A stretch of 64,000 bases of DNA, from positions 1,240,001-1,304,000 of the forward strand of contig NW_026782045.1 of NCBI RefSeq assembly GCF_031769215.1, read 5' to 3'. The notes beneath the pieces were generated by a model. That model was not told the DNA's origin. It ran no database searches and saw only the letters and a list, made by a program, of their open reading frames with translations. Position 1 is the stretch's first letter; each line of letters begins with the position of its first letter. Positions 4,052 through 62,520 of this stretch are shown here, in pieces. The stretch comes from Ylistrum balloti. Lineage: Eukaryota. A program made the position numbers and the translations under genes.

Positions 4052-4723
4052 GGTACTTAAATTGTGTTGGAAATATCACATAAGGAGGGTTATAGAATAA
4101 AGCCTGCTATTTAGTGTTTACTTACAACAAATATGTAAAGTGAATAATATAGAGGTGTTTATATGTTTAAATTCCATTCACAATGTATTACTGACACAAA
4201 CATAGATGTGAAATTAAAAAATTAACAAATTTGTAAAAATTAAAATCACAGAAATCACCAGTAACATACATAAAACATAAGATAGGGAAGAAACTCTCTC
4301 AGCATCCTGACCTATTTTTCATAACTGAATCAAGAAAAATAAGCCTAGCCAACAATTTGATTCTTTTTGTATCATGATGTTTTAACTCACAAGAGTACTA
4401 GTAAATCTTCCGATGTTCAAATTACATAGGACAGTGTTGTAAATCCGTTTTATGTAAGATGTGGATATAACAAAAAATATATCACATGTAAGTTTTACAT
4501 TTTCTTTTTTTTCAAAAATAATGGACAAATTTTATCACCTCAAAAATTTCTGTAGGACTTTTGGGCAAGTTTTGAACATTAACTCTAAAACTGGGTTCTC
4601 TAAATCTAAGCGAGTCCAACAGGAAAAGCATAAACCCTGGACTAAAATATTTGAGTCCTTAAAATCACTGTTGTCTTCAAAACAAAATAAAAAAAAACCT
4701 TTGATGAATCTATCATCAATATA

Positions 4724-5728
4724 ACTACCTCACAATACTACCACCTGGAGTAACTCCTCACAATACTACCACCTGGAGTAACTCCTCACAATACTACCAC
4801 CTGGAGTAACTCCTCACAATACTACCACATCGAGTAACTCCTCACAATACTACCACCTGGAGTAACTCCTCACAATACTACCACCTGGAGTAACTCCTCA
4901 CAATACTACCACCTGGAGTAACTCCTCACAATACTACCACATCGAGTAACTCCTCACAATACTACCACCTGGAGTAACTCCTCACAATACTATCACCTGG
5001 AGTAACTCCTCACAATACTGCCACCTCGAGTAACTCATCACAATACTACCACCTGGAGTAACTCCTCACAATACTACCACCTGGAGTAACTCCTCACAAT
5101 ACTACCACCTGGAGTAACTCCTCACAATACTACCACCTGGAGTAACTCCTCACAATACTATCACCTGGAGTAACTCCTCACAATACTACCACCTGGAGTA
5201 ACTCCTCACAATACTACCACCTGGAGTAACTCCTCACAATACTGCCACCTCGAGTAACTCCTCACAATACTACCACCTGGAGTAACTCCTCAAAATACTA
5301 CCACCTGGAGTAACTCCTCACAATACTGCCACCTCGAGTAACTCCTCACAATACTACCACCTCGAGTGACTCCTCACAATACTACCACCTCGAGTAACTC
5401 CTCACAATACTACCACCTGGAGTAACTCCTCACAATACTACCACCTGGAGTAACTCCTCACAATACTAACACCTGGAGTAACTCCTCACAATACTAACAC
5501 CTGGAGTAACTCCTCATAATACTAACACCTGGAGTAACTCCTCACAATACTAACACCTGGAGTAACTCCTCACAATACTTACACCTGGAGTAACTCCTCA
5601 CAATACTAACACCTGGAGTAATTCCTTATAATACTACCACCTGGAGTAACTCCTCACAGTACTACCACCTCGAGTAACTCCCCACAATACTACCACCTCG
5701 AGTAACTCCTCATAATAATACCACTCCT
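4724..5728. repeat. 28-bp minisatellite, ~36 copies
   Basis: Unit actaccacctggagtaactcctcacaat, with an internal GAGT-A-ACTC inverted repeat. Confidence 0.95.
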
Positions 5729-7426: not shown

Positions 7427-7546
7427 CTAAGAACAACATCCGCCCTCATTTTTCTTTGATTTTCGGAACCGATCTTCATCTCCTAATTCAATTTTATCAC
7501 GGTCGTTTTCGTCCTCCGCTCTTAAATTTTGATCGTTTTGTAAAAT
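7427..7546 (-). CDS. RAB32/38: Rab32/38 last coding exon (ILQNDQNLRAEDENDRDKIELGDEDRFRKSKKNEGGCCS*)
   Basis: Acceptor ttcttttttTGTAG at 7547-7548, 120 nt, phase 0, ends in CCS then TAG. Not in the ORF track because it has no start codon. Confidence 0.9.
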   Translation of the reverse strand: MLQNDQNLRAEDENDRDKIELGDEDRFRKSKKNEGGCCS

Positions 7547-10500
7547 CTACAAAAAAAGAAGTTTGAGAAGACAAATATGAAATGGAGCCCAATAGTGTCC
7601 TTGTTGAATAGTTTGGCAATTTCAGTGTGAAATTTGGGGTCAAAATATTTTGACATTTTGTTGATGAAGGAAGTGATGAAATTTTAATAGTGAATATTTC
7701 TAGCATGATGCCTCTAAAATCTGATCCCTTGCTAATCCTAAATTTGTCTAGAGATGGACTCTAGAGTATTCTGACATATTAATTATCTAAATAGAACCAA
7801 GGCAACTTGATACCTTTCCTGCACTGTTTTTATCTGTCTGATCCTAAAACCAAGTCTCAACACTGCTTAACAATTCTAATTTTCTTCTAACCACATTTTT
7901 TTTTCTTAGTTTGACAGAGGATATCATTTGATGTTGAAAGTCGGGAAATAAAATCTCAAACTACAAACCAAAAATTGCTAAATCCAAATTTGATATAAGG
8001 ACATTGCTTCTCTTTATCAGTAATGTATAAATATTCCAAACACCAATTAAATATCAATCTTAATCCTGTGACTTGTTGCTGAACCTGACCCTTCTATTTA
8101 TTGAGCTCATAGAAAATTCTGTATACTAATTAACATACCTTATATATTGGTAACTTAAAAGAACCAAGGGGCATAACTCTCAGATCTGCATGAGACTCAA
8201 AATCAAACTCAAAAACTCTGATGGGTTGCATTTGGTATTGAGCTCTTTTGTATGGGAGACCTAGATGTCAGTAATGTTTCCTTGTAAGTGATACATACCC
8301 TATTTACTAAGTATCTAGTGGATTCATCGATGTTTATATTTTCTTTAGCCGACGTCTCAAACCAGCCGACGAACCCCTTTTCATGACAGAACTCATCCAT
8401 ATGTGCTGAATTGTTCACTAATCCTTCCTTTGCTTGGTCACACTGTCAACACAAAAATCACAGATCTTAACTGAACTCTGTAAGCTTTCAATTCACTCTT
8501 AAATAAGATACATTATGTTCAATGTTTGAATTGGTTTTGATAATGAAGCAACATATTTACAACATAGAGCTGACCATTAATAAAAAATACTACCATACTG
8601 AGTGTAAATAATTTAACAAAAGATTATGTAAGTTAATAATGAACTTCTGGATTCTGGAGAAAATAGAAAATCAAAAATCTGATCTTCTAAATCTACATCA
8701 GGAAGTAAAGACAGACTACAGGGCTGTTGTCTGATATCTAGACATGATCTTATTAGGCACTAACACACAGGGTACAGGGCTGTTGTCTGTTATCTAGACA
8801 TGATCTTATTAGGCAGTAACACACAGGGTACAGGGCTGTTGTCTGTTATCTAGACATGATCTTATAAGGCAATAACACACAGACTACAGGGCTGTTGTCT
8901 GTTATCTAGACATGATCTTATAAGGCAATAACACACAGGGTACAGGGCTGTTGTCTGTTTATTAGATATAACCTTACTAGCCAGTAACACACAAGGTGCT
9001 GGGGCGTTGTCTGTTATTAAGACATGACCTTATTAGGAAGTAACACACAGGGTACAGGGCTGTTGTCTGTTTATTAGATATTACCTTACTAGCCAGTAAC
9101 ACACAAGGTGCAGGGGCGTTGTCTGTTATTTAGACATGACCTTAATAAGCAGTAACACACAAGGTGCAGGGGCGTTGTCTATTATTTAGACATGACCTTA
9201 TTAAGCAGTAACACACAAGGTGCTGGGGCGTTGTATGTTATTTAGACATTACCTTATTAGGCAGTAACACACACACTGTTCATTAGATATTACCTTACTA
9301 GCCAGTAATACACAAGGTGCAGGGGCGTTGTCTATTATTTAGACATGACCTTATTAAGCAGTAACACACAAGGTGCTGGGGCGTTGTCTATTATTTAGAC
9401 ATGACCTTATTAAGCAGTAACACACAAGGTGCAGGGGCGTTGTCTATTATTTAGACATGACCTTATTAAGCAGTAACACACAAGGTGCTGGGGCGTTGTA
9501 TGTTATTTAGACATTACCTTATTAGGCAGTAACACACAGGGTACAGGGCTGTTGTCTGTTCATTAGATATTACCTTACTAGCCAGTAATACACAAGGTGC
9601 AGGGGCGTTGTCTATTATTTAGACATGACCTTATTAAGCAGTAACACACAAGGTGCTGGGGCGTTGTCTATTATTTAGACATGACCTTATTAAGCAGTAA
9701 CACACAAGGTGCTGGGGCGTTGTATGTTATTTAGACATTACCTTATTAGGCAGTAACACACAGGGTACAGGGCTGTTGTCTGTTCATTAGATATTACCTT
9801 ACTAGCCAGTAATACACAAGGTGCTGGGGCGTTGTATGTTATTTAGACATGACCTTATTTGGCAGTAACACACAGGATACAGGGCTGTTGTCTGTTCATT
9901 AGATATTACCTTACTAGCCAGTAACACACAAGGTGCAGGGGCGTTGTCTATTATTTAGACATGACCTTATTAAGCAGTAACACACAAGGTGCTGGGGCGT
10001 TGTATGTTATTTAGACATGACCTTATTTGGCAGTAACACACAGGATACAGGGCTGTTGTCTGTTCATTAGATATTACCTTACTAGCCAGTAACACACAAG
10101 GTGCAGGGGCGTTGTCTATTATTTAGACATGACCTTATTAAGCAGTAACACACAAGGTGCTGGGGCGTTGTATGTTATTTAGACATTACCTTATTAGGCA
10201 GTAACACACAGGGTACAGGGCTGTTGTCTGTTATTTAGACATGACCTTATTAGGCAGTAACACACAGGGTACAAGGCTGTTATCTGTTTATTAGATATTA
10301 CCTTACTAGGCAGTCATACACAAGGTGCTGGGGCGTTGTCTGTTATTTAGACATGACCTTATTAGGCAGTAACACACAGGATACAGGGCTGTTGTCTGTT
10401 TATTAGATATTACCTTACTAGCCAGTAACTCACAAGGTGCTGGGGCGTTGTCTGTTATTTAGACATGACCTTATTTGGCAGTAACACACAGGGTACAGGG

Positions 10501-11926
10501 CTGTTGTCTCTTATTTAGACATTACCTTACTAGGCAGTAATACACAAGGTGCTGGGGCGTTGTCTGTTATTTAGACATGACCTTATTTGGCAGTAACACA
10601 CAGGGTACAGGGCTGTTGTCTGTTTATTAGATATTACCTTATTAGCCAGTAACACACAAGGTACAGGGCTTCCATCTGCTAACTGCACTTTACTGTCAAG
10701 GTCACCTTTCCATTTAGTGACAGCATCAAATGTAGATGCTCTTGTGACGTCAAACACTATAATACAGCCCACTGCCTCACGATAATAAACCCGGGTCATG
10801 TTTCCGAACCTCTCCTGGCCTAAAAGAAAAAATGTTTAGGTACTGACATACATGTACAAAGAAAAACTGCTGAACCGATCATTTTGTTTAAAATACAGCC
10901 AAGATGACTTTTAAACAAATAGCGAAAGCTTAAATCAGCAATAATTTTTTCCTTGCCATAAGGAAAGAAGATTTCACTGAATTGTAGCAGTATGTATTTC
11001 ACCAATGGCGATTGTGATGTTACTGATAATGAAACCAACTTTATGACTTACCAGCAATATCCCAAAGCTGTAGCCGTACAATTGTTTCTGCATCCCAATT
11101 TAGAACTTTTAACGCAAAATCTACACCTATCTGTGATAATGTTAAGGGAAAGATAAAGTTATCAACAATAACATGCGATATAGTGAACGGAACGTTACTC
11201 TGTTACAACCATAAAAGACTTCAGTGTGTATCTGAGCACAGAATACAAACATGGAAAGCATATTAAAAAATTGTAATATTTTGTTTAAACAAAGCTATTT
11301 TCAATTCACATAAAATTCCCACAGGATTGTTTACTTTGATCACATAGGCATGTTTTTAAAATGTTTAATTTTGAAATTCAGTTTCCATTTAGCAATGAAA
11401 TGCTAACATTATATCATTTAGACACCATTTAACATCATAAAGGAAACAACATCTTAACTGTTGAAAATCTAAGACATTATTTCTTAAGAAACAAAAGCAA
11501 AACACAGGACTTAACTTCCTTGTTCCAATATGACCAAGCCCCAAACACTGACATGGGTCACGATTATTCATTATTCAGCATAATACTTCCCTACTTGGTA
11601 TTTATCAGTAATCATGTGTACCAGCCCAGGACATTACTTCAAATCCAAGTTGATGAAAAGTCCTTCCATAAAAAAATTAATATTTCTTCTAAATCGATTC
11701 CTAATTCTTTTCTAGTATTCTAGTGACAAGGTGTCTACATACAAAAATATACCCGGTGCACATCAAATAATGATTGGACTGTGATAAAGGATACGGTGGC
11801 TCTGTAGTGTTGAGAAAAGAACTGATGAACATATCGTTTGATAATACTTGTCTTTCCTGTACCGAGCTCCCCAATGACCAGTATTTTGTACAAGTGTTCT
11901 TTCTTAGCGTTCTCAGTGGCTCCTGC
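7427..11926 (-). CDS. RAB32/38: Rab32/38-family small GTPase, spliced CDS lacking only its first exon
   Basis: Exons 11926-11795, 11130-11052, 10819-10638, 8442-8299 and 7546-7427 join in frame with GT-AG boundaries. They encode GELGTGKT (G1), YRATIGVDF, WDIAGQERFG (Ile in G3, typical of Rab32/38/29), LLANKCD (G4), ETSAK (G5) and a C-terminal GGCCS prenylation motif. Confidence 0.96.
8299..8442 (-). CDS. RAB32/38: Rab32/38 exon (CDQAKEG...WFETSAKENINIDESTRYLVNR)
   Basis: Acceptor gttgacAG, donor AGG|GTATGT, 144 nt, contains ETSAK. Confidence 0.95.
8712..10670 (-). repeat. 56-bp minisatellite, ~35 copies, derived from the Rab exon/intron junction
   Basis: The sense-strand unit is ccctgtacc(c/t)tgtgtgttactg..aataag|gt(a/c)at.tct..ataacagacaacag. 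The first copy is the coding end of exon 10638-10819. Confidence 0.95.
10638..10819 (-). CDS. RAB32/38: Rab32/38 exon (GQERFGNMTRVYYREAVG...PVPCVLLANK)
   Basis: Acceptor tttcttttAG, donor AAG|GTAATA, 182 nt, phase 1 to 0. Confidence 0.96.
11052..11130 (-). CDS. RAB32/38: Rab32/38 exon (IGVDFALKVLNWDAETIVRLQLWDIA)
   Basis: 79 nt, donor G|GTAAGT, phase 0 to 1. Confidence 0.95.
11131..11794 (-). other. U12-type (minor spliceosome) GT-AG intron, 664 nt
   Basis: 5' end GTATCCTTT (11794-11786). Branch site ttccCTTAAC (core CCTTAAC at 11147-11141) lies 10 nt upstream of the 3' end, with no polypyrimidine tract after it. Confidence 0.9.
11795..11926 (-). CDS. RAB32/38: Rab32/38 exon (AGATENAKKEHLYKILVIGELGTGKTSIIKRYVHQFFSQHYRAT)
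   Basis: Acceptor atttttatttGCAG at 11927-11928, 132 nt, contains the P-loop. Confidence 0.95.
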
Positions 11927-12802
11927 CTGCAAATAAAAATTTCTTTTTTATAAATTATACTCTTTTTCATTTCATTTTTTCTTAATTTAAAATTCATTTT
12001 CATATACAGTGTACAGGTTGCGTTCCTAACAAGTTGATCTCATCTGGAAAAAAATGTTTTAATGACAAACATATACATCAACATCCCCTGTGAAATATTT
12101 AGTTCAATAAAGCTGTTATATGAGATTGAGAAATTCTCAAAGCAACATATCTTCTTCTGTTAAAATCTTGATCTTTTCAGAAAATAATTAATCCGGAATC
12201 ACAATACCAAGTGAGTTAGATCAACAACTGGTCTCACAACTTTAGTCTTAAGTTGGTATCAGGTGTTAGGCTTGTGAATTCTGATGAAATTGTAATTCTA
12301 AATGTTTATCTTAAGAGCAATAATATCCTCAAGTAACACACAATATGCAGGGATCTTAAAAACCCCAAAAACTTCTTTCCATATTTGGATAAAATTTTAA
12401 AAGTTGTGCACATCATTTTAGATTTAAGTTGTTTTCAAATTCAACAATCAACATAAGATCTGCCGAGCTTTTATTACGAATTCACTAAATATTTAAAATT
12501 GACCCCTTCATACATATTTGTCTATGTATACAAGTATCTGAAGCAGGATAATCATTCAACATCATGTGAGATGATGTAGATAACATACGCAGGTGATTCA
12601 TAAACAAAAATCTGACATCAGCCTAAAATGTAGGTCTGGTATATCTCTGGTGGTATAGAACGCGTCATACACCTGTACAAAGTAAACAAAATAACAGTAA
12701 ACAACAGTGTATATTGTAGGTATATATATAGAAAAACATGCAGGTGAAAATTATCATCCAGACAGAAGTAACGTAATTAGGGTTGCTGAAGTATCTGGAA
12801 GT

Positions 12803-13860
12803 ACCATAATTATACTACAATATAGTAAAATATTTCAGTTCTTAATACCATAAATATACTACAATATAGTAAAATATTTCTGTTCTTAATACCATAAATA
12901 TACTACAATATAGTAAAATATTTCAGTTCTTAATACCGTAAATATACTACAATATAGTAAAATATTTCTGTTCTTAATACCGTAAATATACTACAATATA
13001 GTAAAATATTTCTGTTCTTAATACCGTAAATATACTACAATATAGTAAAATATTTCTGTTCTTAATACCGTAAATATACTACAATATAGTAAAATATTTC
13101 TGTTCTTAATACCATAAATATACTACAATATAATAAAATATTTCTGTTCTTAATACCATAAATATACTACAATATAGTAAAATATTTCTGTTCTTAATAC
13201 CATAAATATACTACAATATAGTAAAATATTTCTGTTCTTAATACCATAAATATACTACAATATAGTAAAATATTTCAGTTCTTAATACCGTAAATATACT
13301 ACAATATAGTAAAATATTTCTGTTCTTAATACCGTAAATATACTACAATATAGTAAAATATTTCTGTTCTTAATACCGTAAATATACTACAATATAGTAA
13401 AATATTTCTGTTCTTAATACCATAAATATACTACAATATAGTAAAATATTTCTGTTCTTAATACCATAAATATACTACAATATAGTAAAATATTTCTGTT
13501 CTTAATACCGTAAATATACTACAATATAGTAAAATATTTCTGTTCTTAATACCGTAAATATACTACAATATAGTAAAATATTTCTGTTCTTAATACCGTA
13601 AATATACTACAATATAGTAAAATATTTCTGTTCTTAATACCATAAATATACTACAATATAGTAAAATATTTCTGTTCTTAATACCGTAAATATACTACAA
13701 TATAGTAAAATATTTCTGTTCTTAATACCGTAAATATACTACAATATAGTAAAATATTTCAGTTCTTAATACCGTAAATATACTAAAATATAGTAAAATA
13801 TTTCTGTTCTTAATACCATAAATATACTACTATAGAGTAAAATATTTTGATTATTAGTAT
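12803..13860. repeat. 44-bp AT-rich minisatellite, ~23 copies
   Basis: Unit aatatactacaatatagtaaaatatttctgttcttaatacc(a/g)ta, with decayed edges. Confidence 0.95.
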
Positions 13861-14119
13861 CATAATTATATTACTATATAGTAAAAAATTTCATTATTAC
13901 TACCGTAAATATACTATAATAAAATATCACAATTATTAATACAGACTATAATTAAATATATCAACTCTACACTTCAATACATTTACCTTTATATTTTTAA
14001 AAGATCGGACTTTTTTCAAGTTGTAACTTATAACTAGATAATAGAAGAGGGGTAATAGAGCCAACACCGGGTGCTGTTTGGTAGGCAGTTCAGTCGGTTC
14101 CTTATCAATTAATTAAGGT

Positions 14120-16020: not shown

Positions 16021-19000
16021 TCAGAAAGACATCCAAGGAAGGCAAAAGAAATCTAGATCATAGCGAAAAAATTCTCAGTCCAGGATCAATAAATCAGCAC
16101 TTTAAGATCATTCCACACAGTTAACTCATATCATTGACTAGGAAAATTAAAAAAACAGTTGACAGGGAAAACAACATTCTCAGGCAGCTGGTTAGGAACG
16201 CCATCTGTAGTGGGCCAGTGCTAAACAGGGACAATGGGGGCCACAGACTCCCGCACATTTATGACAAAGTGTTAAACAAACTATAGCTGAATTGACTAAA
16301 GGGCTATCATCTTGTGTAATTTTTGGTCTATAATATGTTTACCATCTCCTCACACTATTTTTTAACCTTGAAGCATACATAGGATGATAAAACAGCTGAA
16401 AAAAGTTGGTCAAAATTCCTTACCATCTCATACAATGCATGTGTCAGTGCTGGTACGCCCCATAATGGTCATTTGTCTGACGACAGTGACCGTATAATCA
16501 TCCAAATGTCACACTCTAATCTTCTACAAGTTGTATTGTTTTATAAGAACTTCTATTCTGCTGATATTATCAACCCAAAGAAAATGTTCTCCTATCAAAC
16601 CATAAAGATAAATTTTAGAACCTTGTCAATATAGGATTTAAGCAGTTTTTCCAAATTTTATTTCTTTTTGCTGTTTTGGAGATTAATAATTGTCAAATGA
16701 AATCGAAAATTAACATTTTGAGGTTTTGCTTATCCCAGTATTATTCTTTCACATTTTAAGCTATAAGAAATTTACTGAAAACAAGGGTCACTTTAAAAAG
16801 AAACCAAGAATATTTATTATCCACGAAAAGACAATGAAGAAAAACTTATCCTTCCATTAACACATACTCTGATACATATAATGGTAACAGAAGTGCAACA
16901 AGCTTTTTTTTTGTTTTTTTTTTCTTTTTGAATTACTTTCTATCATCTAACTTGTCAAAAAAACATGACCAGAACAGTTAATTTAAAAATTTTGAGCATC
17001 TTAAGTTCCATATATATTTAAATTATATCATTGACTTCTTTGCAGACAGAAGAGAAAGTTGGTGGAAACTGGAGAAACTGAGATAAACCTACACATTTTT
17101 ACAGGTGACTCCATACCTTTATTGGGGAATGGTAACCAGGTCACTTTGGTGAACATCAAATTCATTACAAATGCACCAAAGGCCCATTCTAAAATTGTCA
17201 CCAGTGTGACTAAAAACTACCTCTTAGAGAAAAAAATTTACAAACCATTTTCTTTATACTGCAACCACCAAGATCTGAAGATATTTCTTCAAACTCCGAT
17301 GAACTTGTGCTGTCACCAAACGTTTTCCAGCTAAAGCCTGAAGTACCGACTTTAAACAAAGGCACATTTTTGTATTGTTCTGGTTTGCTTCTGTGCATTG
17401 TAGAATGAATTTTGATATTCAACAAATTTGAGAAGAACAAGTTCAATAATTTTACTGTCAATCTCCTTTGAAACATCCCACACGTTTTAAAACAACAATT
17501 TGTAGATTTGGCTATGAATTCTATTTTTCAGCATTTATATAAGGGAATGTTACCACGTACTTATCACGAGACAGCAGCAGTGATTTCATATCCAACTAAT
17601 ACTTAGTTATAATAATAGATCATCCAAAACAGAATATGAAAACACTTTATACAACATCCATGCTAACTTCCCTTGAATCGAGAATGAACTCTCCTTGCCT
17701 TAATCTCGGTGTATCCACTTAGATATCTTAAGGGTTGACAGGACTAAATCAAGTGATCTAAGATGACAAATGATCATATGTCTTAATGTACAAGACAGAC
17801 CAGCAGATTGGTCAAAAAACAATCTGTGGTCTTGTTTCCTGTCGGTCAAAAATGTAGGATCAAACAGGAATTCTTCATTTAAAATAACTACATTGTTTAA
17901 CAGGATAAGATTTGGTATGCCATTTAATACACACAGCACATTTCCTCGGCAACAAAAACACAAGTCACGCACTTCAGCTTGACTGGTTTGTTTACAAATA
18001 AAGATTATCATGTCTCAGATGTGATATCATATGAAGAAATGAAAGTCATTTCTTGAATGAGCAATGAAGTGGCCTTTTGAGTAAGATATTAACAGAGGTC
18101 ATGTGACCTTGACACCTGATTGTGAAACATACATACTTATTCAACCCTAATAAAGGTGCTTTGTACTTACAAAAAGAAAACAACAACACGAAATGATGTG
18201 TTAAATAAAATGAAGTGCAAGGAAAATTTTCAGATATGACAAGTTTGGATCAAGAAACTTAGGTAGCAGGACACAGTTAGATTTAATGTTTCTTCAAAAT
18301 GTGACTTCAGGCCATAGTTTATTTCTTAGTGGCTTGGTATATGATAAACAAAGAGTTCAAAGGCTGAATATTATATTGGTTAATCAGTGAAATAAAAAAG
18401 GTACCTTAAAAACGCTTATGAAAATGAAATCTTTGCAAAATTCATTCGACTTTCCTTGAGAAGGAGTGGAAGACTTCAATAATGTTTTAACAGTGCTTGC
18501 TTCAATATGACTATAAACTAAATCTGCAGTAAATGGAGCAGATATCAATACTTTATACGACGGGTAGTCATTTCTCTAAAACCTGAAGCTGAGGAAAAAA
18601 GTAAAGTTAATGTTATAACTACTTGGTGGGTTCAGATATAACAACCTAACTTTTTTCCAGCTTGGTATAGCACTTGATGAGAAGCTTTTCAGTGTCCTTA
18701 ATTTTCAGAGTTGCTGGACCATAAAATTTGGAAGATAATTTGTAATTAATTAGGGTTGTGTTGAGGCACTAATACATTATCTATGTACCAGGTTTAGTTA
18801 GACTTTCTGATTGACAGATCTGGAGGCAAAGCTTTATCATGTTGTGATGCTGCAAACAGTGGAAAAGTAACACCAAAATCACTTCACGGTTTCTCCATAC
18901 AGCCCAACCAAAGCTATACCTTTGACACTATTCTCAATCTTGGTTTTTACAGTGAAAAGAATTTGAGTATTTTCACAAATTTGACAATTGTGTTCTTTAT

Positions 19001-21140: not shown

Positions 21141-21484
21141 ACAAAGACTTTTTCATTAACAGATTTCAAATGAAGGTAACTAAGGTTTTTTTTTGTAGTT
21201 GTAGGTTGCATGTAAAAAACACAGGGTAAGCAAATACAGTTCACAATCTTTACAAAACCGTCTATAATTTTTCATGAATAATATTGGAACCGTATAATAT
21301 ATTTTTATTTTTTTTTACACTAAATGTGTAAATTCAGGGACTTTTTAAAGCATTCATACCTGATTCCAAGATTTTCAAAACAAATATGAATTCCAAGACA
21401 TAAACATGCAAGAAATGAAATTCTACAGCTTTTCATTATTGTATATACCTTATGCATGTATAGTTATCTTATATAACCACTTAC

Positions 21485-21550
21485 TATAGCAGTGGTGCGT
21501 ACATCCTTGATCCCCTGGTCCGTGATGGTAGCTGGATCTAACAAAGACAT
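21485..21550 (-). CDS. RAB32/38: Candidate alternative first coding exon of Rab32/38 (MSLLDPATITDQGIKDVRTTAI)
   Basis: ATG with A at -3, an upstream in-frame stop, 22 open codons, and a GTAAGT donor in phase 0, which matches the acceptor at 11926. Confidence 0.6.
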
Positions 21551-23995: not shown

Positions 23996-25040
23996 TCGAC
24001 TTCCCTGGGTCCAGAGACTGAACCACGTTATCGACTTCCCTGGGTCCAGAGACTGAACCACGTTATCGACTTCCCTGGGTCCAGAGACTGAACCACGTTA
24101 TCGACTTCCCTGGGTCCAGAGACTGAACCACGTTATCGACTTCCCTGGGTCCAGAGACTGAACCACGTTATCGACTTCCCTGGGTCCAGAGACTGAACCA
24201 CGTTATCGACTTCCCCGGGTCCAGAGACTGAACCACGTTATCGACTTCCCCGGGTCCAGAGACTGAACCACGTTATCGACTTCCCCGGGTCCAGAGACTG
24301 AACCACATTATCGACTTCCCCGGGTCCAGAGACTGAACCACGTTATCGACTTCCCCGGGTCCAGAGACTGAACCACGTTATCGACTTCCCCGGGTCCAGA
24401 GACTGAACCACGTTATCGACTTCCCCGGGTCCAGAGACTGAACCACGTTATCGACTTCCCCGGGTCCAGAGACTGAACCACGTTATCGACTTCCCCGGGT
24501 CCAGAGACTGAACCACGTTATCGACTTCCCCGGGTCCAGAGACTGAACCACGTTATCGACTTCCCCGGGTCCAGAGACTGAACCACGTTATCGACTTCCC
24601 CGGGTCCAGAGACTGAACCACGTTATCGACTTCCCCGGGTCCAGAGACTGAACCACGTTATCGACTTCCCCGGGTCCAGAGACTGAACCACGTTATCGAC
24701 TTCCCCGGGTCCAGAGACTGAACCACGTTATCGACTTCCCTGGGTCCAGAGACTGAACCACGTTATCGACTTCCCTGGGTCCAGAGACTGAACCACGTTA
24801 TCGACTTCCCTGGGTCCAGAGACTGAACCACATTATCGACTTCCCTGGGTCCAGAGACTGAACCACGTTATCGACTTCCCTGGGTCCAGAGACTGAACCA
24901 CGTTATCGACTTCCCCGGGTCCAGAGACTGAACCACATTATCGACTTCCCCGGGTCCAGAGACTGAACCACGTTATCGACTTCCCCGGGTCCAGAGACTG
25001 AACCACGTTATCGACTTCCCTGGGTCCAGAGACTGAACCA
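23996..25040. repeat. 35-bp GC-rich, very homogeneous minisatellite, ~30 copies
   Basis: Unit tcgacttccc(c/t)gggtccagagactgaaccac(g/a)tta. Confidence 0.97.
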
Positions 25041-31062: not shown

Positions 31063-32275
31063 GACAGACCAGATATGTGATATCAGACATGTTAGAACAG
31101 ACCAGATATATGATATAAGACATGTTAGGACAGACCAGATATGTGATATTAGAAATGTAAGGACAGACCAGATATGTGATATTAGAAATGTTAGGATAGA
31201 CCAGATATGTGGTATTAGAAATGTTAGCTCAGACCAGATATATGATATTGGAAATGTTAGGACAGACCAGATATGTGATATTAGACATGTTAGGACAGAC
31301 CAGATATGTGATATTAGACATGTAAGGACAGACCAGATATGTGATATTAGAAATGTTAGCTCAGACCAGATATATGATATTGGAAATGTTAGGACAGACC
31401 AGATATGTGATATTAGACATGTTAGGACAGACCAGATATGTGATATTAGACATATAAGGACAGACCAGATATGTGATATTAGACATGTTAGCTCAGACCA
31501 GATATATGATATTGGAAATGTTAGGACAGACCAGATATGTGATATTAGACATGTAAGGACAGACCAGATATGTGATATTAGACATATAAGGACAGACCAG
31601 ATATGTGATATCAGACATGTTAGGACAGACCAGATATGTGATATCAGGCATGTTAGGACAGACCAGATATGTGATATTAGAAATGCTAGCTCAGACCAGA
31701 TATATGATATTGGAAATGTTAGGACAGACCAGATATGTGATATTAGACATGTTAGGACAGACCAGATACGTGATATTAGACATGTAAGGACAGACCAGAT
31801 ATGTGATATTAGAAATGTAAGGACAGACCAGATATGTGATATTAGACATGTAAGGACAGACCAGATATGTGATATCAGACATGTTAGGACAGACCAGATA
31901 TGTGATATTAGACATGTTAGGATAGACCAGATATGTGATATTAGACATGTAAGGACAGACCAGATATGTGATATTAGACATGTTAGGACAGACCAGATAT
32001 GTGATATTAGACATGTAAGGACAGACCAGATATGTGATATTAGACATGTAAGGACAGACCAGATATGTGATATCAGACATGTTAGGACAGACCAGATATG
32101 TGATATTAGAAATGTTAGGACAGACCAGATATGTGATATTAGACATGTTAGGACAGACCAGATATGTGATATTAGACATGTAAGGACAGACCAGATATGT
32201 GATATTAGACATGCTTGGACAGACCAGATATGTGATATTAGACATGCTTGGACAGACCAGATATGTGATATTAAT
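31063..32275. repeat. 33-bp minisatellite, ~37 copies
   Basis: Unit gacagaccagatatgtgatattagacatgt(t/a)ag, which gives the 11-aa periodic ORFs. Confidence 0.95.
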
Positions 32276-33461: not shown

Positions 33462-35628
33462 AAACGTGCGGAGAGGAAAGTCTGTCAATTACGTGTGGAG
33501 AGGAAAGTCTATCACTTACGTGTGGAAAGGAAAGTCTATCACTTACGTGTGGAAAGGAAAGTCTGTCACTTATGTGTAGAGAGGAAAGTCTGTCAGTTAC
33601 GTGTAGAGAGGAATGTCTATCACTTACGTGTGGAGAGGAAAGTCTGTCACTTACGTGTAGAGAGGAATGTCTATCACTTACGTGTAGAGAGGAAAGTCTG
33701 TCAGTTACGTGTGGAGAGGAAAGTCTGTCAATTACGTGTGGAGAGGAAAGTCTATCACTTACGTGTGGAAAGGAAAGTCTGTCACTTATGTGTAGAGAGG
33801 AAAGTCTGTCACTTACGTGTAGAGAGGAATGTCTATCACTTACGTGTGGAGAGGAAAGTCTGTCACTTACGTGTAGAGAGGAATGTCTATCACTTACGTG
33901 TAGAGAGGAAAGTCTGTCAGTTACGTGTGGAGAGGAAAGTCTGTCAATTACGTGTGGAGAGGAATGTCTATCACTTACGTGTGGAGAGGAATGTCTATCA
34001 CTTACGTGTAGAGAGGAAAGTCTGTCACTTACGTGTAGAGAGGAATGTCTATCACTTACGTGTGGAGAGGAATGTCTATCACTTACGTGTAGAGAGGAAT
34101 GTCTATCACTTACGTGTAGAGAGGAAAGTCTGTCAGTTACGTGTGGAGAGGAAAGTCTGTCAGTTACGTGTGGAGAGGAAAGTCTGTCACTTACGTGTAG
34201 AGAGGAATGTCTATCACTTACGTGTAGAGAGGAAAGTCTGTCACTTACGTGTAGAGAGGAATGTCTATCACTTACGTGTGGAGAGGAATGTCTATCACTT
34301 ACGTGTAGAGAGGAATGTCTATCACTTACGTGTAGAGAGGAATGTCTATCACTTACGTGTAGAGAGGAATGTCTATCACTTACGTGTAGAGAGGAATGTC
34401 TATCACTTACGTGTAGAGAGGAAAGTCTGTCACTTACGTGTGGAGAGGAATGTCTATCACTTACGTGTAGAGAGGAAAGTCTGTCACTTACGTGTAGAGA
34501 GGAAAGTCTGTCAGTTACGTGTAGAGAGGAAAGTCTGTCACTTACGTGTGGAGAGGAAAGTCTGTCACTTACGTGTAGAGAGGAATGTCTATCACTTACG
34601 TGTAGAGGGTCTATCACTTACGTGTGGAGAGGAAATCACTTACGTGTAGAGAGGAATGTCTATCACTTACGTGTGGAGAGGAAAGTCTGTCACTTACGTG
34701 TGGAGAGGAATGTCTATCACTTACGTGTAGAGAGGAATGTCTATCACTTACGTGTAGAGAGGAATGTCTATCACTTACGTGTAGAGAGGAAAGTCTGTCA
34801 CTTACGTGTGGAGAGGAATGTCTATCACTTACGTGTAGAGAGGAATGTCTATCACTTACGTGTAGAGAGGAAAGTCTGTCAGTTACGTGTAGAGAGGAAA
34901 GTCTGTCACTTACGTGTAGAGAGGAAAGTCTGTCACTTACGTGTGGAGAGGAATGTCTATCACTTACGTGTAGAGAGGAATGTCTATCACTTACGTGTAG
35001 AGAGGAAAGTCTGTCACTTACGTGTAGAGAGGAATGTCTATCACTTACGTGTGGAGAGGAAAGTCTGTCACTTACGTGTAGAGAGGAAAGTCTGTCACTT
35101 ACGTGTAGAGAGGAAAGTCTGTCACTTACGTGTGGAGAGGAAAGTCTGTCACTTACGTGTGGAGAGGAATGTCTATCACTTACGTGTAGAGAGGAAAGTC
35201 TATCACTTACGTGTAGAGAGGAAAGTCTGTCACTTACGTGTAGAGAGGAATGTCTATCACTTACGTGTAGAGAGGAATGTCTATCACTTACGTGTAGAGA
35301 GGAAAGTCTGTCAGTTACGTGTAGAGAGGAAAGTCTGTCACTTACGTGTGGAGAGAGAAGTGTCTATCACTTACGTGTGGAGAGGAAAGTGTGACACTTA
35401 TGTGTAGAGAGGAATGTCTATCACTTACGTGTGGAGAGGAAAGTCTGTCACTTACGTGTGGAGAGGAAAGTCTGTCAGTTACGTGTGGAGAGGAAAGTGT
35501 GACACTTACGTGTAGAGAGGAAAGTGTGACACTTACGTGTAGAGAGGAATGTCTATCACTTACGTGTGGAGAGGAAAGTCTGTCAGTTACGTGTGGAGAG
35601 GAAAGTCTGTCAGTTACGTGTGGAGAGA
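33462..35628. repeat. 27-bp minisatellite, ~80 copies
   Basis: Unit cacttacgtgt(a/g)gagaggaa(a/t)gtct(g/a)t, with 9-aa periodic ORFs in several frames and a register break near 34605-34640. Confidence 0.97.
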
Positions 35629-58100: not shown

Positions 58101-58987
58101 GTAGTATCATCTTCTGACCACGCAATTTCTAGAAATACAGTAACTTTGCTCGAGCCTTAAAATGGGAATTTTACCGGTTCTCAATTTTTTTCTGAAACTT
58201 TCACTGTATGTACTTCAGATAATGAGCCAAGTAATTCGATAGACTTTCTAGTGCACTGAAAACGGAAATAGGTTTTAATCTTTCAGGAAAACTTTTCTGG
58301 TGTCATTTTTTCAAATTCATGATTGTTATTTTTTATAAATTGACAATATATATATTTTTATTTTTTATATGGAAACTTGCAGCAGAATCTTCTCATTCAA
58401 AGCAGACATCTTATGACTGGGTACACCACATAATTGACTAAAATTGAAATACAAATCTTTTGGCGTTTCAATGACACCTTTACCGGTTCTTGATTTTACT
58501 CAAATTTTAACAAATGTCCTTGGCATAAAGGAACAAATAATATATAAAAGTTTTTGGTGCACTCGAAGTTGAAGTACATGTTTCAGTTCTTTGAAAAATT
58601 GCCTCAGCTGAAAAAAGTATGAAAAAAAATCATGCTTTTTTTTCCTATTTTGCAGTATTTTAATACATTATTATCACTATATTGTCAAACTGATCCTTGT
58701 TAGTCAAACATTACATCATTTGATAATGTACGCTGTGGTCTTAATACATTTTCAAACGAACAAATGAATCCTGTCACACTGCTATGGTCACGACACCAAA
58801 TGGGTCGTAGCACAGGTCCTATGGACCTTTTCAATGTTTTAAATCCTATTTCATGGGTAGTCACTAAAGATGCTAAAAATACCACACACTTTTATCTGAT
58901 CCAGTGCGTGGGCAAAGTTCCATTGTTCCTGAAAGAAATCCTTTACGATAGTTAATTATATCGTTTGTACGATGGTCTTTAGTTATA

Positions 58988-59900
58988 AACATGTCGCAGT
59001 TTGATACCCCGTCCTAAACCCGCATAAAAACATGTCGCAATTTGATACCCCGTCCTAAACCCGCATATAAACATGTCGCAATTTGATACTCCGTCCTAAA
59101 CCCGCATATAAACATGTCGCCATTTGATACCCCGTCCTAAACCCGCATATAAACATGTCGCCATTTGATACCCCGTCCTAAACCCGCATATAAACATGTC
59201 GCCATTTGATACCCCGTCCTAAACCCACATATAAACATGTCGCCATTTGATACCCCGTCCTAAAACCGCATATAAACATGTCGCCATTTGATACCCCGTC
59301 CTAAACCCGCATATAAACATGTCGCAATTTGATACCCCGTCCTAAACCCACATATAAACATGTCGCAATTTGATACTCCGTCCTAAACCCGCATATAAAC
59401 ATGTCGCAATTTGATACCCCGTCCTAAAACCGCATATAAACATGTCGCAATTTGATACTCCGTCCTAAACCCGCATATAAACATGTCGCCATTTGATACC
59501 CCGTCCTAAACCCGCATATAAACATGTCGCCATTTGATACCCCGTCCTAAACCCGCATATAAACATGTCGCAATTTGATACCCCGTCCTAAACCCGCATA
59601 TAAACATGTCGCAATTTGATACCCCGTCCTAAACCCGCATATAAACATGTCGCAATTTGATACCCCGTCCTAAACACGCATATAAACATGTCGCAATTTG
59701 ATACCCCGTCCTAAACCCGCATATAAACATGTCGCAATTTGATACCCTGTCCTAAACCCTCATATAAACATGTCGCAATTTGATACTCCGTCCTAAACCC
59801 GCATATAAACATGTCGCAATTTGATACCCTGTCCCAAACCCGCATATAAACATGTCGCAATTTGATACCCCGTCCTAAACCCGCATATAAACATGTCGCA
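58988..59900. repeat. 41-bp minisatellite, ~22 copies
   Basis: Unit aaacatgtcgc(a/c)atttgataccccgtcctaaacccgcatat. Confidence 0.96.
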
Positions 59901-60534
59901 ATTATTTTATTTTATTTAATTTATCGTTATGTATTGATGTGACTTACATTCAATACCTTAATTAATGACAAATAAGACCGAAATTCAAAATATCATTTGA
60001 AAATAATATTTGCAGTTGTAGTTTTCAGAAAAAGTATGAACAGAATATTTATGTGTGTATAAATTGTACTAGATTTTGTTATCTTCTGATTGCGATGTTT
60101 GTCTGTAAATTTGTTGTAAATGCCTCGACAGAGCCCCGGAATATCGTTGGCTGTGTGTGGCGGTTCAATAGTACAATTCGATAACTTAAATTATCCATTA
60201 TGTAGCTTTCGTAGTTGTGTGGAATGTCGTGTATATTTATCAAAGTTAAGCAAAGTTGTGTGTGATCTAATTCGGATTGGTAACCGCTCGAAAATAAATA
60301 AGTTAAAAAAACACGAGAAGCCTCGCGGTGTTCGCCAGTTTAATAATATTTACCCCTGGGTTGAGACCCCACCCCATCCTCCAGTCCCAACATCACTTCT
60401 TGGATACCTTGAACATTTCTCAACTACAGATCAGCCAAATTCCGGCAACTTTCAAATAACATAGGACAGAAACGACAATCATAGAAACATCTCTAAATCT
60501 GAATTGAGGTTCTCTTAATTTGGCCTAAGTATTT

Positions 60535-62372
60535 GGATTTTATCTATTTACGCCTAAGTATTTAAGTCTATATATCTATTTACGCCTAAGTATTTAAGTC
60601 TATATAACAATTTACGCCTAAGTGTTTACAGTCTACACATCAATTTACGCCTAAGTGTTTACAGTCTATATATCAATTTACGCCTAAGTATTTACCGTCT
60701 ATATATCAATTTACGCCTAAGTATTTACAGTCTATATAACAATTTACGCCTAAGTGTTTACAGTCTATATAACAATTTACGCATGAGCTATATAACAATT
60801 TGGTATTTACAGTATATACCAGTTTACGCCTAAGCCTAAGTATTTACAGTCTATATAACAATTTACGCCTAAGTGTTTACAGTCTATACATCAATTAACG
60901 CCTAAATGCTTACAGTCTATATATCAATTAATGCCTAAGTGTTTACAGGCTATATAATATATACCAATTTACGCCTAAGTGTTTACAGTCTATATATCAA
61001 TTTACGCCTAAGTGTTTACAGTCTATATAACAATTTACGCCTAAGTGTTTACAGTCTATATAACAATTTACGCATGAGCGTTTGGATTCTATATACCAGT
61101 TTACGCCTAAGTATTTACAGTCTATATACCAGTTTACGCCTAAGTGTTTACAGTCTATATAACAATTTACGCCTAAGTGTTTACAGTCTATATAACAATT
61201 TACGCATGAGCGTTTGGATTCTATATACCAGTTTACGCCTAAGTGTTTACAGTCTATATAATAATTTACGCATAAGTGTTACAGTCTATATATCAATTTA
61301 CGCCTAAGTGTTTACAGTCTATATAACAATTTACGCCTAAGTATTTACAGTCTATACATCAATTTACGCCTAAGTGTTTACAGTCTATATAACAATTTAC
61401 GCCTAAGTGTTTACAGTCTATATAACAATTTACGCCTAAGTATTTACAGTCTATACATCAATTTACGCCTAAGTGTTTACAGTCTATATAACAATTTACG
61501 CCTAAGTATTTACAGTCTATATAACAATTTACGCATGAGCGTTTGGATTCTATACATCAATTTACGCCTAAGTGTTTACAGTCTATATAACAATTTACGC
61601 CTAAGTATTTACAGTCTATATAACAATTTACGCATGAGCGTTTGGATTCTATATACCAATTTACGCCTAAGTGTTTACAGTCTATACATCAATTTACGCC
61701 TAAGTGTTTACAGTCTATACATCAATTTACGCCTAAGTGTTTACAGTCTATACATCAATTTACGCCTAAGTGTTTACAGTCTATATAACAATTTACGCAT
61801 GAGCGTTTGGATTCTATATACCAGTTTACGCCTAAGTGTTTACAGTCTATATAACAATTTACGCCTAAGTGTTTACAGTCTATATAACAATTTACGCCTA
61901 AGTGTTTACAGTCTATACATCAATTTACGCCTAAGTGTTTACAGTCTATATATCAATTTACGCCTAAGTGTTTACAGTCTACATAACAATTTACGCCTAA
62001 GTGTTTACAGTCTATACATCAATTTACGCCTAAGTGTTTACAGTCTATATAACAATTTACGCCTAAGTGTTTACAGTCTATATAACAATTTACGCCTAAG
62101 TGTTTACAGTCTATATAACAATTTACGCCTAAGTATTTACAGTCTATATACCAGTTTACGCCTAAGTGTTTACAGTCTATATACCAGTTTACGCCTAAGT
62201 GTTTACAGTCTATATAACAATTTACGCCTAAGTGTTTACAGTCTATATAACAATTTACGCCTAAGTGTTTACAGTCTATATAACAATTTACGCCTAAGTG
62301 TTTACAGTCTATATACCAGTTTACGCCTAAGTGTTTACAGTCTATATACCAGTTTACGCCTACGTGTTTGGA
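60535..62372. repeat. 33-bp minisatellite, ~55 copies, with an interspersed variant unit
   Basis: Unit caatttacgcctaagtgtttacagtctatataa, with variant cgcatgagcgtttggattctat. Confidence 0.95.
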
Positions 62373-62520
62373 TTCTATATGTTGTTGAGGACTGTGTCTT
62401 CCTCTTTGATTGCTCTATCTATTCTGACGAGCGATAAATCCTTTCTCAATGCTTCCCGGAATGCTATCCTTTCATGGAATCTCTTGAAGACTGTCATACT
62501 CCTGATTCATCCTATGGTAC
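62362..62520 (+). mobile_element. Possible LINE ORF2 C-terminal remnant
   Basis: VVEDCVFLFDCSIYSDER resembles the zinc-knuckle-like EDxxHFLxxCxxYxxxR end of LINE ORF2. Confidence 0.4.

What the first reader, a model, noticed from the sequence alone, without database searches (positions are those of the whole stretch)
8712..10670. A Rab32/38 exon end plus its splice donor has been amplified ~35 times into the intron
The true exon ends ...GGA AG|C CCT GTA CCT TGT GTG TTA CTG GCT AAT AAG|GTAATATCT. The next ~1.9 kb of intron consists of 56-bp copies of those 31 exonic nt plus the first 25 intronic nt. Every copy keeps AAG|GT (as GTAATA, GTCATG or GTAATG), and many carry ACAACAG just before the exon-like part, forming AG-31nt-GT pseudo-microexons. 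The shared AGCCCTGTACC at the junction looks like the microhomology that seeded the duplication. Using a downstream donor would add 56n nt and frameshift the protein, or hit the in-frame TAG at 10532-10530. The array could therefore be a copy-number-variable set of decoy donors feeding NMD (inference), or be ignored by the spliceosome.
Basis: partly seen in the sequence, partly recalled or inferred. Interest (0 to 1): 0.75.

Follow-up and report, generated by a model that had tools for sequence, protein, structure and literature searches.

The report
Splice-donor minisatellite in scallop Rab32 intron
An intron of a scallop Rab32/38 gene begins with about 34 head-to-tail copies of the preceding exon's last 33 bases plus its splice signal; the repeat is real, but it belongs to an already described kind ("mirage" minisatellites, the human F7 intron 7 repeat) that usually leaves splicing unchanged.

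Summary
Window 10670-~8697 (minus strand) is a 56-bp tandem array: the genuine exon-end/donor unit, 34 further units and a degenerate partial one. The gene is the Rab32/38 orthologue of the scallop Ylistrum balloti. The exon end (..PVPCVLLANK) is conserved from human to molluscs, so the exon seeded the array and not the reverse. The array occurs nowhere else in the 648-Mb assembly, and fragments of it appear in a second sample.

- 30 of the 34 extra copies keep AAG|GT. The four most distal read AAG|AT.
- Only 14 units carry ACAACAG, and these pseudo-acceptors lack a pyrimidine tract.

I could not test a decoy/NMD role because no RNA run is available. The annotated protein uses the first donor.

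This kind of repeat is known: amphioxus "mirages" and human F7 IVS7, IFI6, CBS, LMNB2 and PDGF. In those genes only the first donor, or the first few, are used. This scan has already noted dozens of such arrays elsewhere in this genome.

New here: an oyster carries an independent 30-bp x 15 array at the orthologous Rab32 junction, while Crassostrea gigas/angulata has none in the 260-270 nt of intron I could see.

Verdict: a new member of a known kind, most likely tolerated rather than functional.

The parts
10638..10819 (-). Rab32/38 coding exon (G)QERFGNMTRVYY...SPVPCVLLANK, 182 nt. Its last 33 nt form the exonic part of the repeat unit.
   Evidence: Translation and ORF. phmmer against PDB gives Rab32 at E 4e-26 over all 59 residues. 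100% match to Ylistrum balloti Rab-38-like P0238.
10615..10670 (-). Unit 0 of the array: the genuine junction, 33 exonic nt + AAG|GTAATA donor + 17 more intronic nt.
   Evidence: 48/56 identical to the array consensus, and every one of its bases is present in at least 4 copies.
10636..10637 (-). [quoted passage not shown]
   Evidence: This is the junction used in annotated protein P0238.
8726..10614 (-). 34 further 56-bp units (24 distinct sequences among all 35 units) arranged in higher-order blocks of 2-5 units. They carry 30 GT pseudo-donors.
   Evidence: TRF. Unit table. Donor tally. Unit labels and a perfect 168-bp duplicate, units 9-11 = 12-14.
8726..8949 (-). Four most distal units, in which the donor GT has become AT (AAG|ATCATG).
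8697..8725 (-). Degenerate, truncated last unit: the first 15 nt are identical to unit 32, then 24/30 with a 1-nt gap. This is the end of the array.
   Evidence: Local alignment.
9253..9293 (-). Interval between two successive donors shortened to 41 nt, i.e. a 15-nt deletion inside one unit.
   Evidence: Spacing table.
10530..10532 (-). First in-frame stop (TAG) when the exon is read on into the array. It is met by every transcript that would use pseudo-donor 2 or later.
8443..10637 (-). The intron (2195 nt). About 88% of it is array.
8299..8442 (-). Next coding exon, CDQAKEGLVNN...STRYLVNR.
7430..7546 (-). Last coding exon, ILQNDQ...GGCCS (prenylation tail).
11052..11130 (-). Coding exon IGVDFALKVLNWDAETIVRLQLWDIAG.
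11795..11926 (-). Coding exon AGATENAKKEHLYKILVIGELGTGKTS...HYRAT (P-loop).
17246..17398 (-). Upstream first coding exon of the annotated 269-aa isoform (MHRSKPEQYKN...).

Best explanation
This is a 'mirage'-type minisatellite, a tandem array whose first monomer spans an exon/intron boundary.

Origin and growth: a 56-bp segment (the last 33 nt of a Rab32/38 exon, its 5' splice site and 17 more intronic nt) was duplicated in tandem. It then grew by unequal exchange or slippage, partly in blocks of 2-5 units, to 34 extra copies that now fill 88% of the intron. The origin and growth are shown by the sequence.

Splicing: the spliceosome uses the first, genuine donor (10638). The 30 GT pseudo-donors are silent, or at most the nearest ones are used rarely. 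Any such transcript carries a premature stop. This step is inferred from the annotated protein and from the studied human cases.

Role: the array is a tolerated by-product of a genome that makes minisatellites at a very high rate. It is probably length-polymorphic and is not a regulatory device. This step is also inferred.
For: - Array anatomy and register with the junction.
- Exon end ancestral: full-length alignment to human Rab32/38 and identical ..SPVPCVLLANK in Pecten, Ylistrum, Saccostrea and Crassostrea.
- Unit 0 has no private base.
- Higher-order blocks and a perfect 168-bp internal duplicate show continuing turnover.
- The array is unique to this locus in the assembly.
- Array fragments appear in a second sample whose flank differs at about 1% of sites.
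- The annotated Ylistrum balloti protein P0238 matches all window exons and joins LLANK|CDQAKEG.
- Literature: F7 IVS7, LMNB2 and PDGF arrays use only the authentic first donor; IFI6 and CBS also use the two nearest pseudo-sites; selection is 5'-to-3' (PMC1557585). Amphioxus mirages do not disturb splicing and are length-unstable (PMC3087553).
- Background: 14 minisatellite arrays cover about a quarter of this 64-kb window, and dozens of donor-seeded arrays are noted elsewhere in this genome.
- Arrays at this junction are lineage-specific. An oyster has a 30-bp array and C. gigas/angulata has none in the intron available, so no conserved element is implied.
Against: - No RNA data for this species could be obtained, so use of pseudo-donors is not excluded.
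- Eight copies carry a 9-mer donor identical to the genuine one and five more are equally complementary to U1, so silence cannot be explained by site strength alone.
- The same junction carries an independent array in an oyster. That could hint at something more than chance.
- Copy number in the assembly is not independently verified, because the short-read contigs break inside the array.
Confidence: 0.73

Rival explanations
1. One reading: the array is a copy-number-variable set of decoy donors. A share of transcripts is spliced from a pseudo-donor, gets a premature stop and is degraded by NMD, so array length tunes Rab32 output.
For: All 30 GT pseudo-donors would give a premature stop at least 119 nt upstream of the last exon junction. 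Thirteen pseudo-donors are as good as the real one by U1 complementarity. In human IFI6 and CBS the two nearest pseudo-sites are in fact used (PMC1557585). An independent array sits at the same junction in an oyster, and it also gives stops.
Against: No RNA evidence is available. The annotated protein uses the first donor. The nearest pseudo-donor is the weak GTCATG type, with C at +3. In F7, pseudo-sites identical to or stronger than the real one stay silent. C. gigas/angulata shows no array in the 260-271 nt of intron available, and the Rab29-like paralogue lacks one. Such arrays are common in unrelated genes of this genome, which fits a mutational explanation better than a gene-specific one.
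Confidence: 0.1
2. The reiterated donors act as extra U1 snRNP binding sites. They either help recognition of the weak genuine donor or suppress premature cleavage and polyadenylation inside the intron.
For: The genuine donor is weak: it has no G at +5 and matches CAG|GTAAGT at only 6 of 9 positions. AATAAA hexamers lie 10 nt (positions +11 to +16) downstream of the GT in unit 0 and in four copies, two GTAATA type, one GTAATA with a variant base, and one GTTATA (unit table).
Against: This is purely inferential. The AATAAA motifs are themselves part of the amplified unit, so the array creates the problem it would solve. Relatives manage without an array. No such role is reported for the known arrays.
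Confidence: 0.05
3. Junction-specific hot spot: something about this exon end or its donor, such as the TGTGTGT run or co-transcriptional U1 binding, makes it especially prone to tandem duplication. That would explain independent arrays in a scallop and an oyster.
For: Two arrays with different unit lengths (56 vs 30 bp) and species-specific intron parts (GTAATA vs GTGAGA) sit at the orthologous junction.
Against: Only one of the other lineages checked has an array. With donor-seeded arrays this common in bivalve genomes, one coincidence is weak evidence. The paralogue with the same ..LLLANK|GT junction has none.
Confidence: 0.1
4. Assembly artefact, or reverse direction: the exon end was captured from a pre-existing satellite.
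For: None beyond the general difficulty of assembling 2-kb arrays.
Against: Array fragments at 99% identity or more are present in an independent short-read data set. The unit is found nowhere else in the genome. The exon end encodes the conserved G4-box region ..VLLANK shared with human Rab32.
Confidence: 0.02

Closest known systems
Human F7 intron 7 (IVS7) 37-bp VNTR
   Same: The first monomer spans the exon/intron boundary, so the genuine donor is followed by reiterated donors. Use of a pseudo-site would disrupt the mRNA. In F7 only the most upstream site is used, through 5'-to-3' selection (PMC1557585).
   Different: F7 has 5-9 copies with 4 exonic nt per unit and strictly identical pseudo-sites. 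Here there are 34 extra copies with 33 exonic nt per unit and diverged subfamilies, four of which have lost GT. Splicing was not measured here.
Amphioxus 'mirage' minisatellites (Adh3, globin BflGb6/BflGb9)
   Same: [quoted passage not shown] They show concerted evolution inside the array with diverged edges, length instability and normal splicing (PMC3087553).
   Different: Different phylum. In amphioxus both acceptor and donor boundaries are reported and copy numbers are lower (2-6 in the globins). The array here is much longer.
Human IFI6 (6-16) intron 2 and CBS intron 13 minisatellites
   Same: Long arrays (25 pseudo-sites; 15-20 repeats) that start at the donor.
   Different: There the two nearest pseudo-sites are used constitutively alongside the genuine one. 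Whether that happens here is unknown. The nearest copy here has a weakened GTCATG site.
30-bp array at the orthologous Rab32 junction of an ostreid oyster (locus L009, Logan SRR28925563)
   Same: Same gene and same junction. The unit is the exon end (24 nt) plus the donor (GTGAGA), 14.8 copies, with 13 further copies at exact 30-nt spacing and at least 70% identical to the junction. Read-through meets a stop in the first unit.
   Different: Different unit length and different intronic part. The intron is only about 760 nt. The array is absent from the available part of the intron (260-271 nt) in C. gigas/angulata contigs L016/L017. I read it as an independent event.

Membership tests
Exon/intron-boundary minisatellite ('mirage'; F7 IVS7 type) | Head-to-tail tandem array with minisatellite-size units | tested here: met
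   Period 56, 34.8 copies, 83-87% matches. Exact 56-nt spacing of 34 of 35 donors.
Exon/intron-boundary minisatellite ('mirage'; F7 IVS7 type) | First monomer spans the genuine exon/intron boundary, in register with the array | tested here: met
   Unit 0 = 10670-10615, made of 33 exonic and 23 intronic nt. The next unit starts at 10614.
Exon/intron-boundary minisatellite ('mirage'; F7 IVS7 type) | Splice signal reiterated in the copies | tested here: met
   30 of 34 copies keep AAG|GT. Eight have the same 9-mer as the genuine donor.
Exon/intron-boundary minisatellite ('mirage'; F7 IVS7 type) | Normal mRNA made from the most upstream donor | not testable with these tools
   No RNA run was found. 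The only indirect support is that annotated protein P0238 joins LLANK|CDQAKEG.
Exon/intron-boundary minisatellite ('mirage'; F7 IVS7 type) | Length instability or polymorphism | tested here: inconclusive
   A perfect 168-bp internal duplicate and eight identical units show recent turnover. The second sample shows base variants, but its contigs break in the array, so copy number cannot be read.
Rab32/Rab38 subfamily GTPase (host gene) | Sequence nearest to Rab32/38 rather than other Rabs, with complete G-domain exons | tested here: met
   PDB best hits are Rab32 (4e-26), Rab38 (4e-24) and Rab7L1 (4e-20); other Rabs score E 2.8e-08 or weaker. 100% match to the Ylistrum balloti 'Rab-38-like' protein. 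P-loop GELGTGKTS, WDIAGQERF, LLANKCD and ETSAK are all present.
Regulated unproductive splicing (alternative splicing coupled to NMD) | Alternative site gives a premature stop more than 50 nt upstream of the last exon junction | tested here: met
   In silico only: the stops lie 119 to 1701 nt upstream of the last junction for the 30 GT pseudo-donors.
Regulated unproductive splicing (alternative splicing coupled to NMD) | Alternative isoform is actually produced and stabilised when NMD is blocked | not testable with these tools
   No RNA run.
Regulated unproductive splicing (alternative splicing coupled to NMD) | The poison element is conserved among relatives | tested here: inconclusive
   No array in the first 260-271 nt of the intron in C. 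gigas/angulata, none in five other taxa and none in the paralogue. One oyster has an array with an unrelated unit length. Other scallops could not be fetched.

The most novel reading that the evidence does not exclude
5' splice-site junctions in pteriomorph bivalves may be true hot spots that seed minisatellites again and again. The same Rab32 junction was hit independently in a scallop (56 bp) and an oyster (30 bp), and dozens of other genes in this scallop carry such arrays. That would point either to a donor-linked mutational mechanism, for instance one tied to co-transcriptional U1 binding or to stalled replication at these sites, or to selection for reiterated U1 sites. In that case this array would be one instance of a lineage-wide process rather than an accident.
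Probability: 0.12. Interest if true: 0.7.

Novelty: new member of a known kind. Interest (0 to 1): 0.3.

Why it matters
On its own this is one more example of a known curiosity. It has some practical uses:
- It is a natural test case for how the spliceosome picks one donor. There are 30 GT pseudo-donors, 13 of them as good as the real one, behind a weak genuine site in a single-copy, conserved Rab32/38 gene.
- It warns gene annotators and variant callers about likely length polymorphism and mis-assembly in this intron.
- Together with the oyster array and the many other arrays noted in this genome, it supports a genome-wide census of donor-seeded minisatellites in bivalves. Such a census could show whether 5' splice sites are mutational hot spots.

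Tried and rejected
- RNA evidence: the look-up of sequencing runs returned a single DNA-like short-read run and no RNA. Read laying showed contigs breaking at 10612 and no joints.
- Orthologous introns of Pecten maximus, Saccostrea cucullata and Ostrea edulis through their NCBI proteins: not on record in the look-up of encoding contigs. P0001, a second 30-nt-period oyster variant, was also not on record.
- Apparent exon-end 'echoes' in the read-through peptides of two other taxa (P0023/L019 and P0054/L020): a scan for copies at least 70% identical to each locus's own 30-nt junction found none, so I dropped them.
- Dispersed satellite or transposon origin: rejected, since the only hits in the 648-Mb genome are at this locus.
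- Exon derived from the satellite (reverse direction): rejected by conservation of the exon end.
- Pseudo-microexons (AG-31 nt-GT): only 14 units have the AG, and their upstream 25 nt are 32-36% pyrimidine. I consider them unlikely.
- Paralogue test: the Rab29-like gene at C348:586379 has the same ..LLLANK|GT junction but no junction array.
- Microhomology seeding: cannot be decided, because the phase of the first duplication is erased and the distal end is a truncated unit.
I searched exon by exon and used returned proteins (P0007, P0127, P0238) instead.
- The search of protein representatives, structure prediction and Rfam were not used, because the protein's identity was not in doubt.
Full report
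**What is there**

Read on the minus strand, window 10819-10638 is a coding exon that ends ...GGA AGC CCT GTA CCT TGT GTG TTA CTG GCT AAT AAG, followed by GTAATATC. Tandem Repeats Finder reports one array over 8717-10668 with periods 56, 112 and 168. That is 34.8 copies of the 56-bp unit at 83-87% matches.

Cutting the strand at every AAG|(G/A)T anchor gives 35 units in exact 56-nt register. Unit 0 (10670-10615) is the real junction: 33 exonic nt plus 23 intronic nt. Thirty-four further units run down to 8726. One interval is shortened to 41 nt by a 15-nt deletion (9293 to 9253). A degenerate, truncated unit ends the array near 8697. The intron is 8443-10637 (2195 nt), so the array fills about 88% of it.

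**The gene and the organism**

The exon peptide hits human Rab32 (E 4e-26), Rab38 and Rab7L1 over its full length. Other Rabs score far weaker.

Word searches started from returned proteins identify the closest named relatives as Pecten maximus Rab-38-like and Ylistrum balloti Rab-38-like, P0238. P0238 matches every window exon at 100% within exon bounds, including an upstream first exon at 17398-17246. The window is therefore Ylistrum balloti (Pectinidae) or something indistinguishable from it.

The gene model on the minus strand is:
- 17398-17246
- 11926-11795
- 11130-11052
- 10819-10638
- 8442-8299
- 7546-7430

The assembly holds only one other, 64%-identical paralogue of this exon.

**Direction of copying**

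The exon end encodes ..SPVPCVLLANK. This is identical in Pecten, Ylistrum, Saccostrea and Crassostrea and aligns with human Rab32 to the last residue. The exon therefore came first.

Unit 0 shares 48/56 bases with the array consensus. At every variable column its base is carried by at least 4 copies, so it has no private base, as expected of the template. A 336-bp probe from the array hits only this locus in the 648.5-Mb assembly. That excludes a dispersed satellite or a transposon.

**Internal structure**

The 35 units comprise 24 distinct sequences. One sequence occurs eight times. Units 9-11 are repeated perfectly as units 12-14, a 168-bp duplicate. Mean pairwise identity among copies is 85%. 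Unit types alternate in blocks of 2-5 units, which explains the 112- and 168-bp periods. The array is therefore old enough to have diverged subfamilies and is still turning over.

A second data set (run X1, short-read contigs, flank differing at about 1% of sites) contains array fragments, 15 of 24 at 99% identity or more. It has a single-copy contig that stops at 10612, where the repeats begin. The array is real, but its copy number is not independently confirmed.

**Splice signals**

The donor 9-mers, including the real one, are:

| Donor | Count |
|---|---|
| AAG\|GTCATG | 16 |
| AAG\|GTAATA | 9 |
| AAG\|GTAATG | 5 |
| AAG\|GTTATA | 1 |
| AAG\|ATCATG | 4 (the four most distal units) |

The genuine donor matches CAG|GTAAGT at only 6 of 9 positions. 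Eight copies are identical to it and five are equally good. The copy nearest to it has C at +3.

Using pseudo-donor 1 adds 56 nt and shifts the frame, giving a stop in the next exon 119 nt before the last junction. All later donors run into TAG 10532-10530.

ACAACAG|CC pseudo-acceptors occur in 14 units. Only 32-36% of the 25 nt before them are pyrimidines, against 56-72% at the gene's real acceptors. The 'pseudo-microexon' reading is weak.

**Expression**

No RNA run for this organism is served, so junction use could not be measured. The only indirect evidence is that the annotated protein P0238 joins ..LLANK to CDQAKEG. That is donor 10638 to acceptor 8442.

**Relatives**

Prokaryote-style ORF calls on genomic contigs gave access to the same junction in other taxa.

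- Contig L009 comes from an ostreid oyster. Its exon DNA is 86.7% identical to C. gigas mRNA contigs, and its next-exon peptide is identical to that of Saccostrea cucullata. It has a 30-bp array of 14.8 copies starting in the exon end. The unit is 24 exonic nt plus GTGAGA, and 13 further copies lie at exact 30-nt spacing.
- C. gigas/angulata genomic contigs (99.5% identical to the mRNA contigs) show no copy in the first 260-271 nt of the intron.
- The remaining contigs checked show none either: a third Crassostrea contig with only 84 nt of intron, and contigs from four further taxa. The scallop's own Rab29-like paralogue also has none.

The two arrays differ in unit length and in their intronic part, so I read them as independent events. 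Pecten, Saccostrea and Ostrea loci could not be fetched.

**Comparison with what is known**

Earlier notes of this scan, on other pieces of the same genome, describe many donor-seeded arrays. They name amphioxus 'mirages' and the human F7 repeat as the known kind. I checked both papers.

[quoted passage not shown] - PMC1557585 describes the F7 IVS7 37-bp VNTR, whose first element spans the boundary and whose identical pseudo-sites stay silent. It also lists IFI6 (25 pseudo-sites, the two nearest used), CBS, LMNB2 and PDGF.

The Rab32 array meets every structural criterion of this kind. The behavioural criteria (first donor used, length polymorphism) remain untested or inconclusive. A limited full-text search found no report from bivalves.

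**Verdict**

The origin story is supported. The decoy/NMD role is untested and is the less likely reading.

The most probable account is a tolerated boundary minisatellite in a genome that is extremely rich in minisatellites: 14 arrays cover about a quarter of this window. The genuine, most upstream donor is probably chosen as in F7.

It is a new member of a known kind. The one point worth following up is the recurrence, both at the same junction in an oyster and in many other genes of this scallop.

Noticed in passing
window 11131-11794 (minus strand): The intron after the P-loop exon starts GTATCCTT and has TTCCCTTAAC ending 10 nt before the CAG acceptor. These are the hallmarks of a U12-type (minor spliceosome) intron.
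   Followed up: partly
window, whole (for example 1-1756, 4722-5724, 12802-13921, 23996-25040, 31063-32273, 33464-35627, 39427-41185, 49623-50354, 58984-59903, 60546-62380): Fourteen separate minisatellite arrays (units 20-70 bp, up to 80 copies) cover roughly a quarter of the 64-kb window. The 28-bp array at 4722-5724 reads CCAG|GTGGTA on the minus strand, which looks donor-like. I did not check whether it or the others start in an exon.
   Followed up: no
L009:461-904 (oyster contig, Logan SRR28925563): Independent 30-bp x 14.8 array of exon end plus GTGAGA donor at the orthologous Rab32 junction. The copy most like the real junction (2 mismatches in 30) is the most distal one.
   Followed up: yes
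L019:4533-5247 (unidentified mollusc-like contig, ENA ERZ25069859): A 360-bp unit present twice begins with the last 9 nt of the next Rab32 exon plus its donor (GTGTCAAAG|GTCAGT). The second copy starts at about 4886, right after an AG. This is a two-copy boundary duplication in the same gene of another species.
   Followed up: partly
window 17246-17398 and 21479-21550 (minus strand): Two alternative upstream first coding exons of the Rab32/38 gene. One matches the Ylistrum 269-aa isoform and the other matches the N-terminus of Pecten maximus isoform X2.
   Followed up: partly
L022 (G000:C348:584000-592000): The surroundings of the Rab29-like paralogue are also packed with minisatellites (43 bp x 52, 60 bp x 5, 37 bp x 70) and a G-rich tract in the intron. 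None starts at the LLLANK|GT junction.
   Followed up: partly
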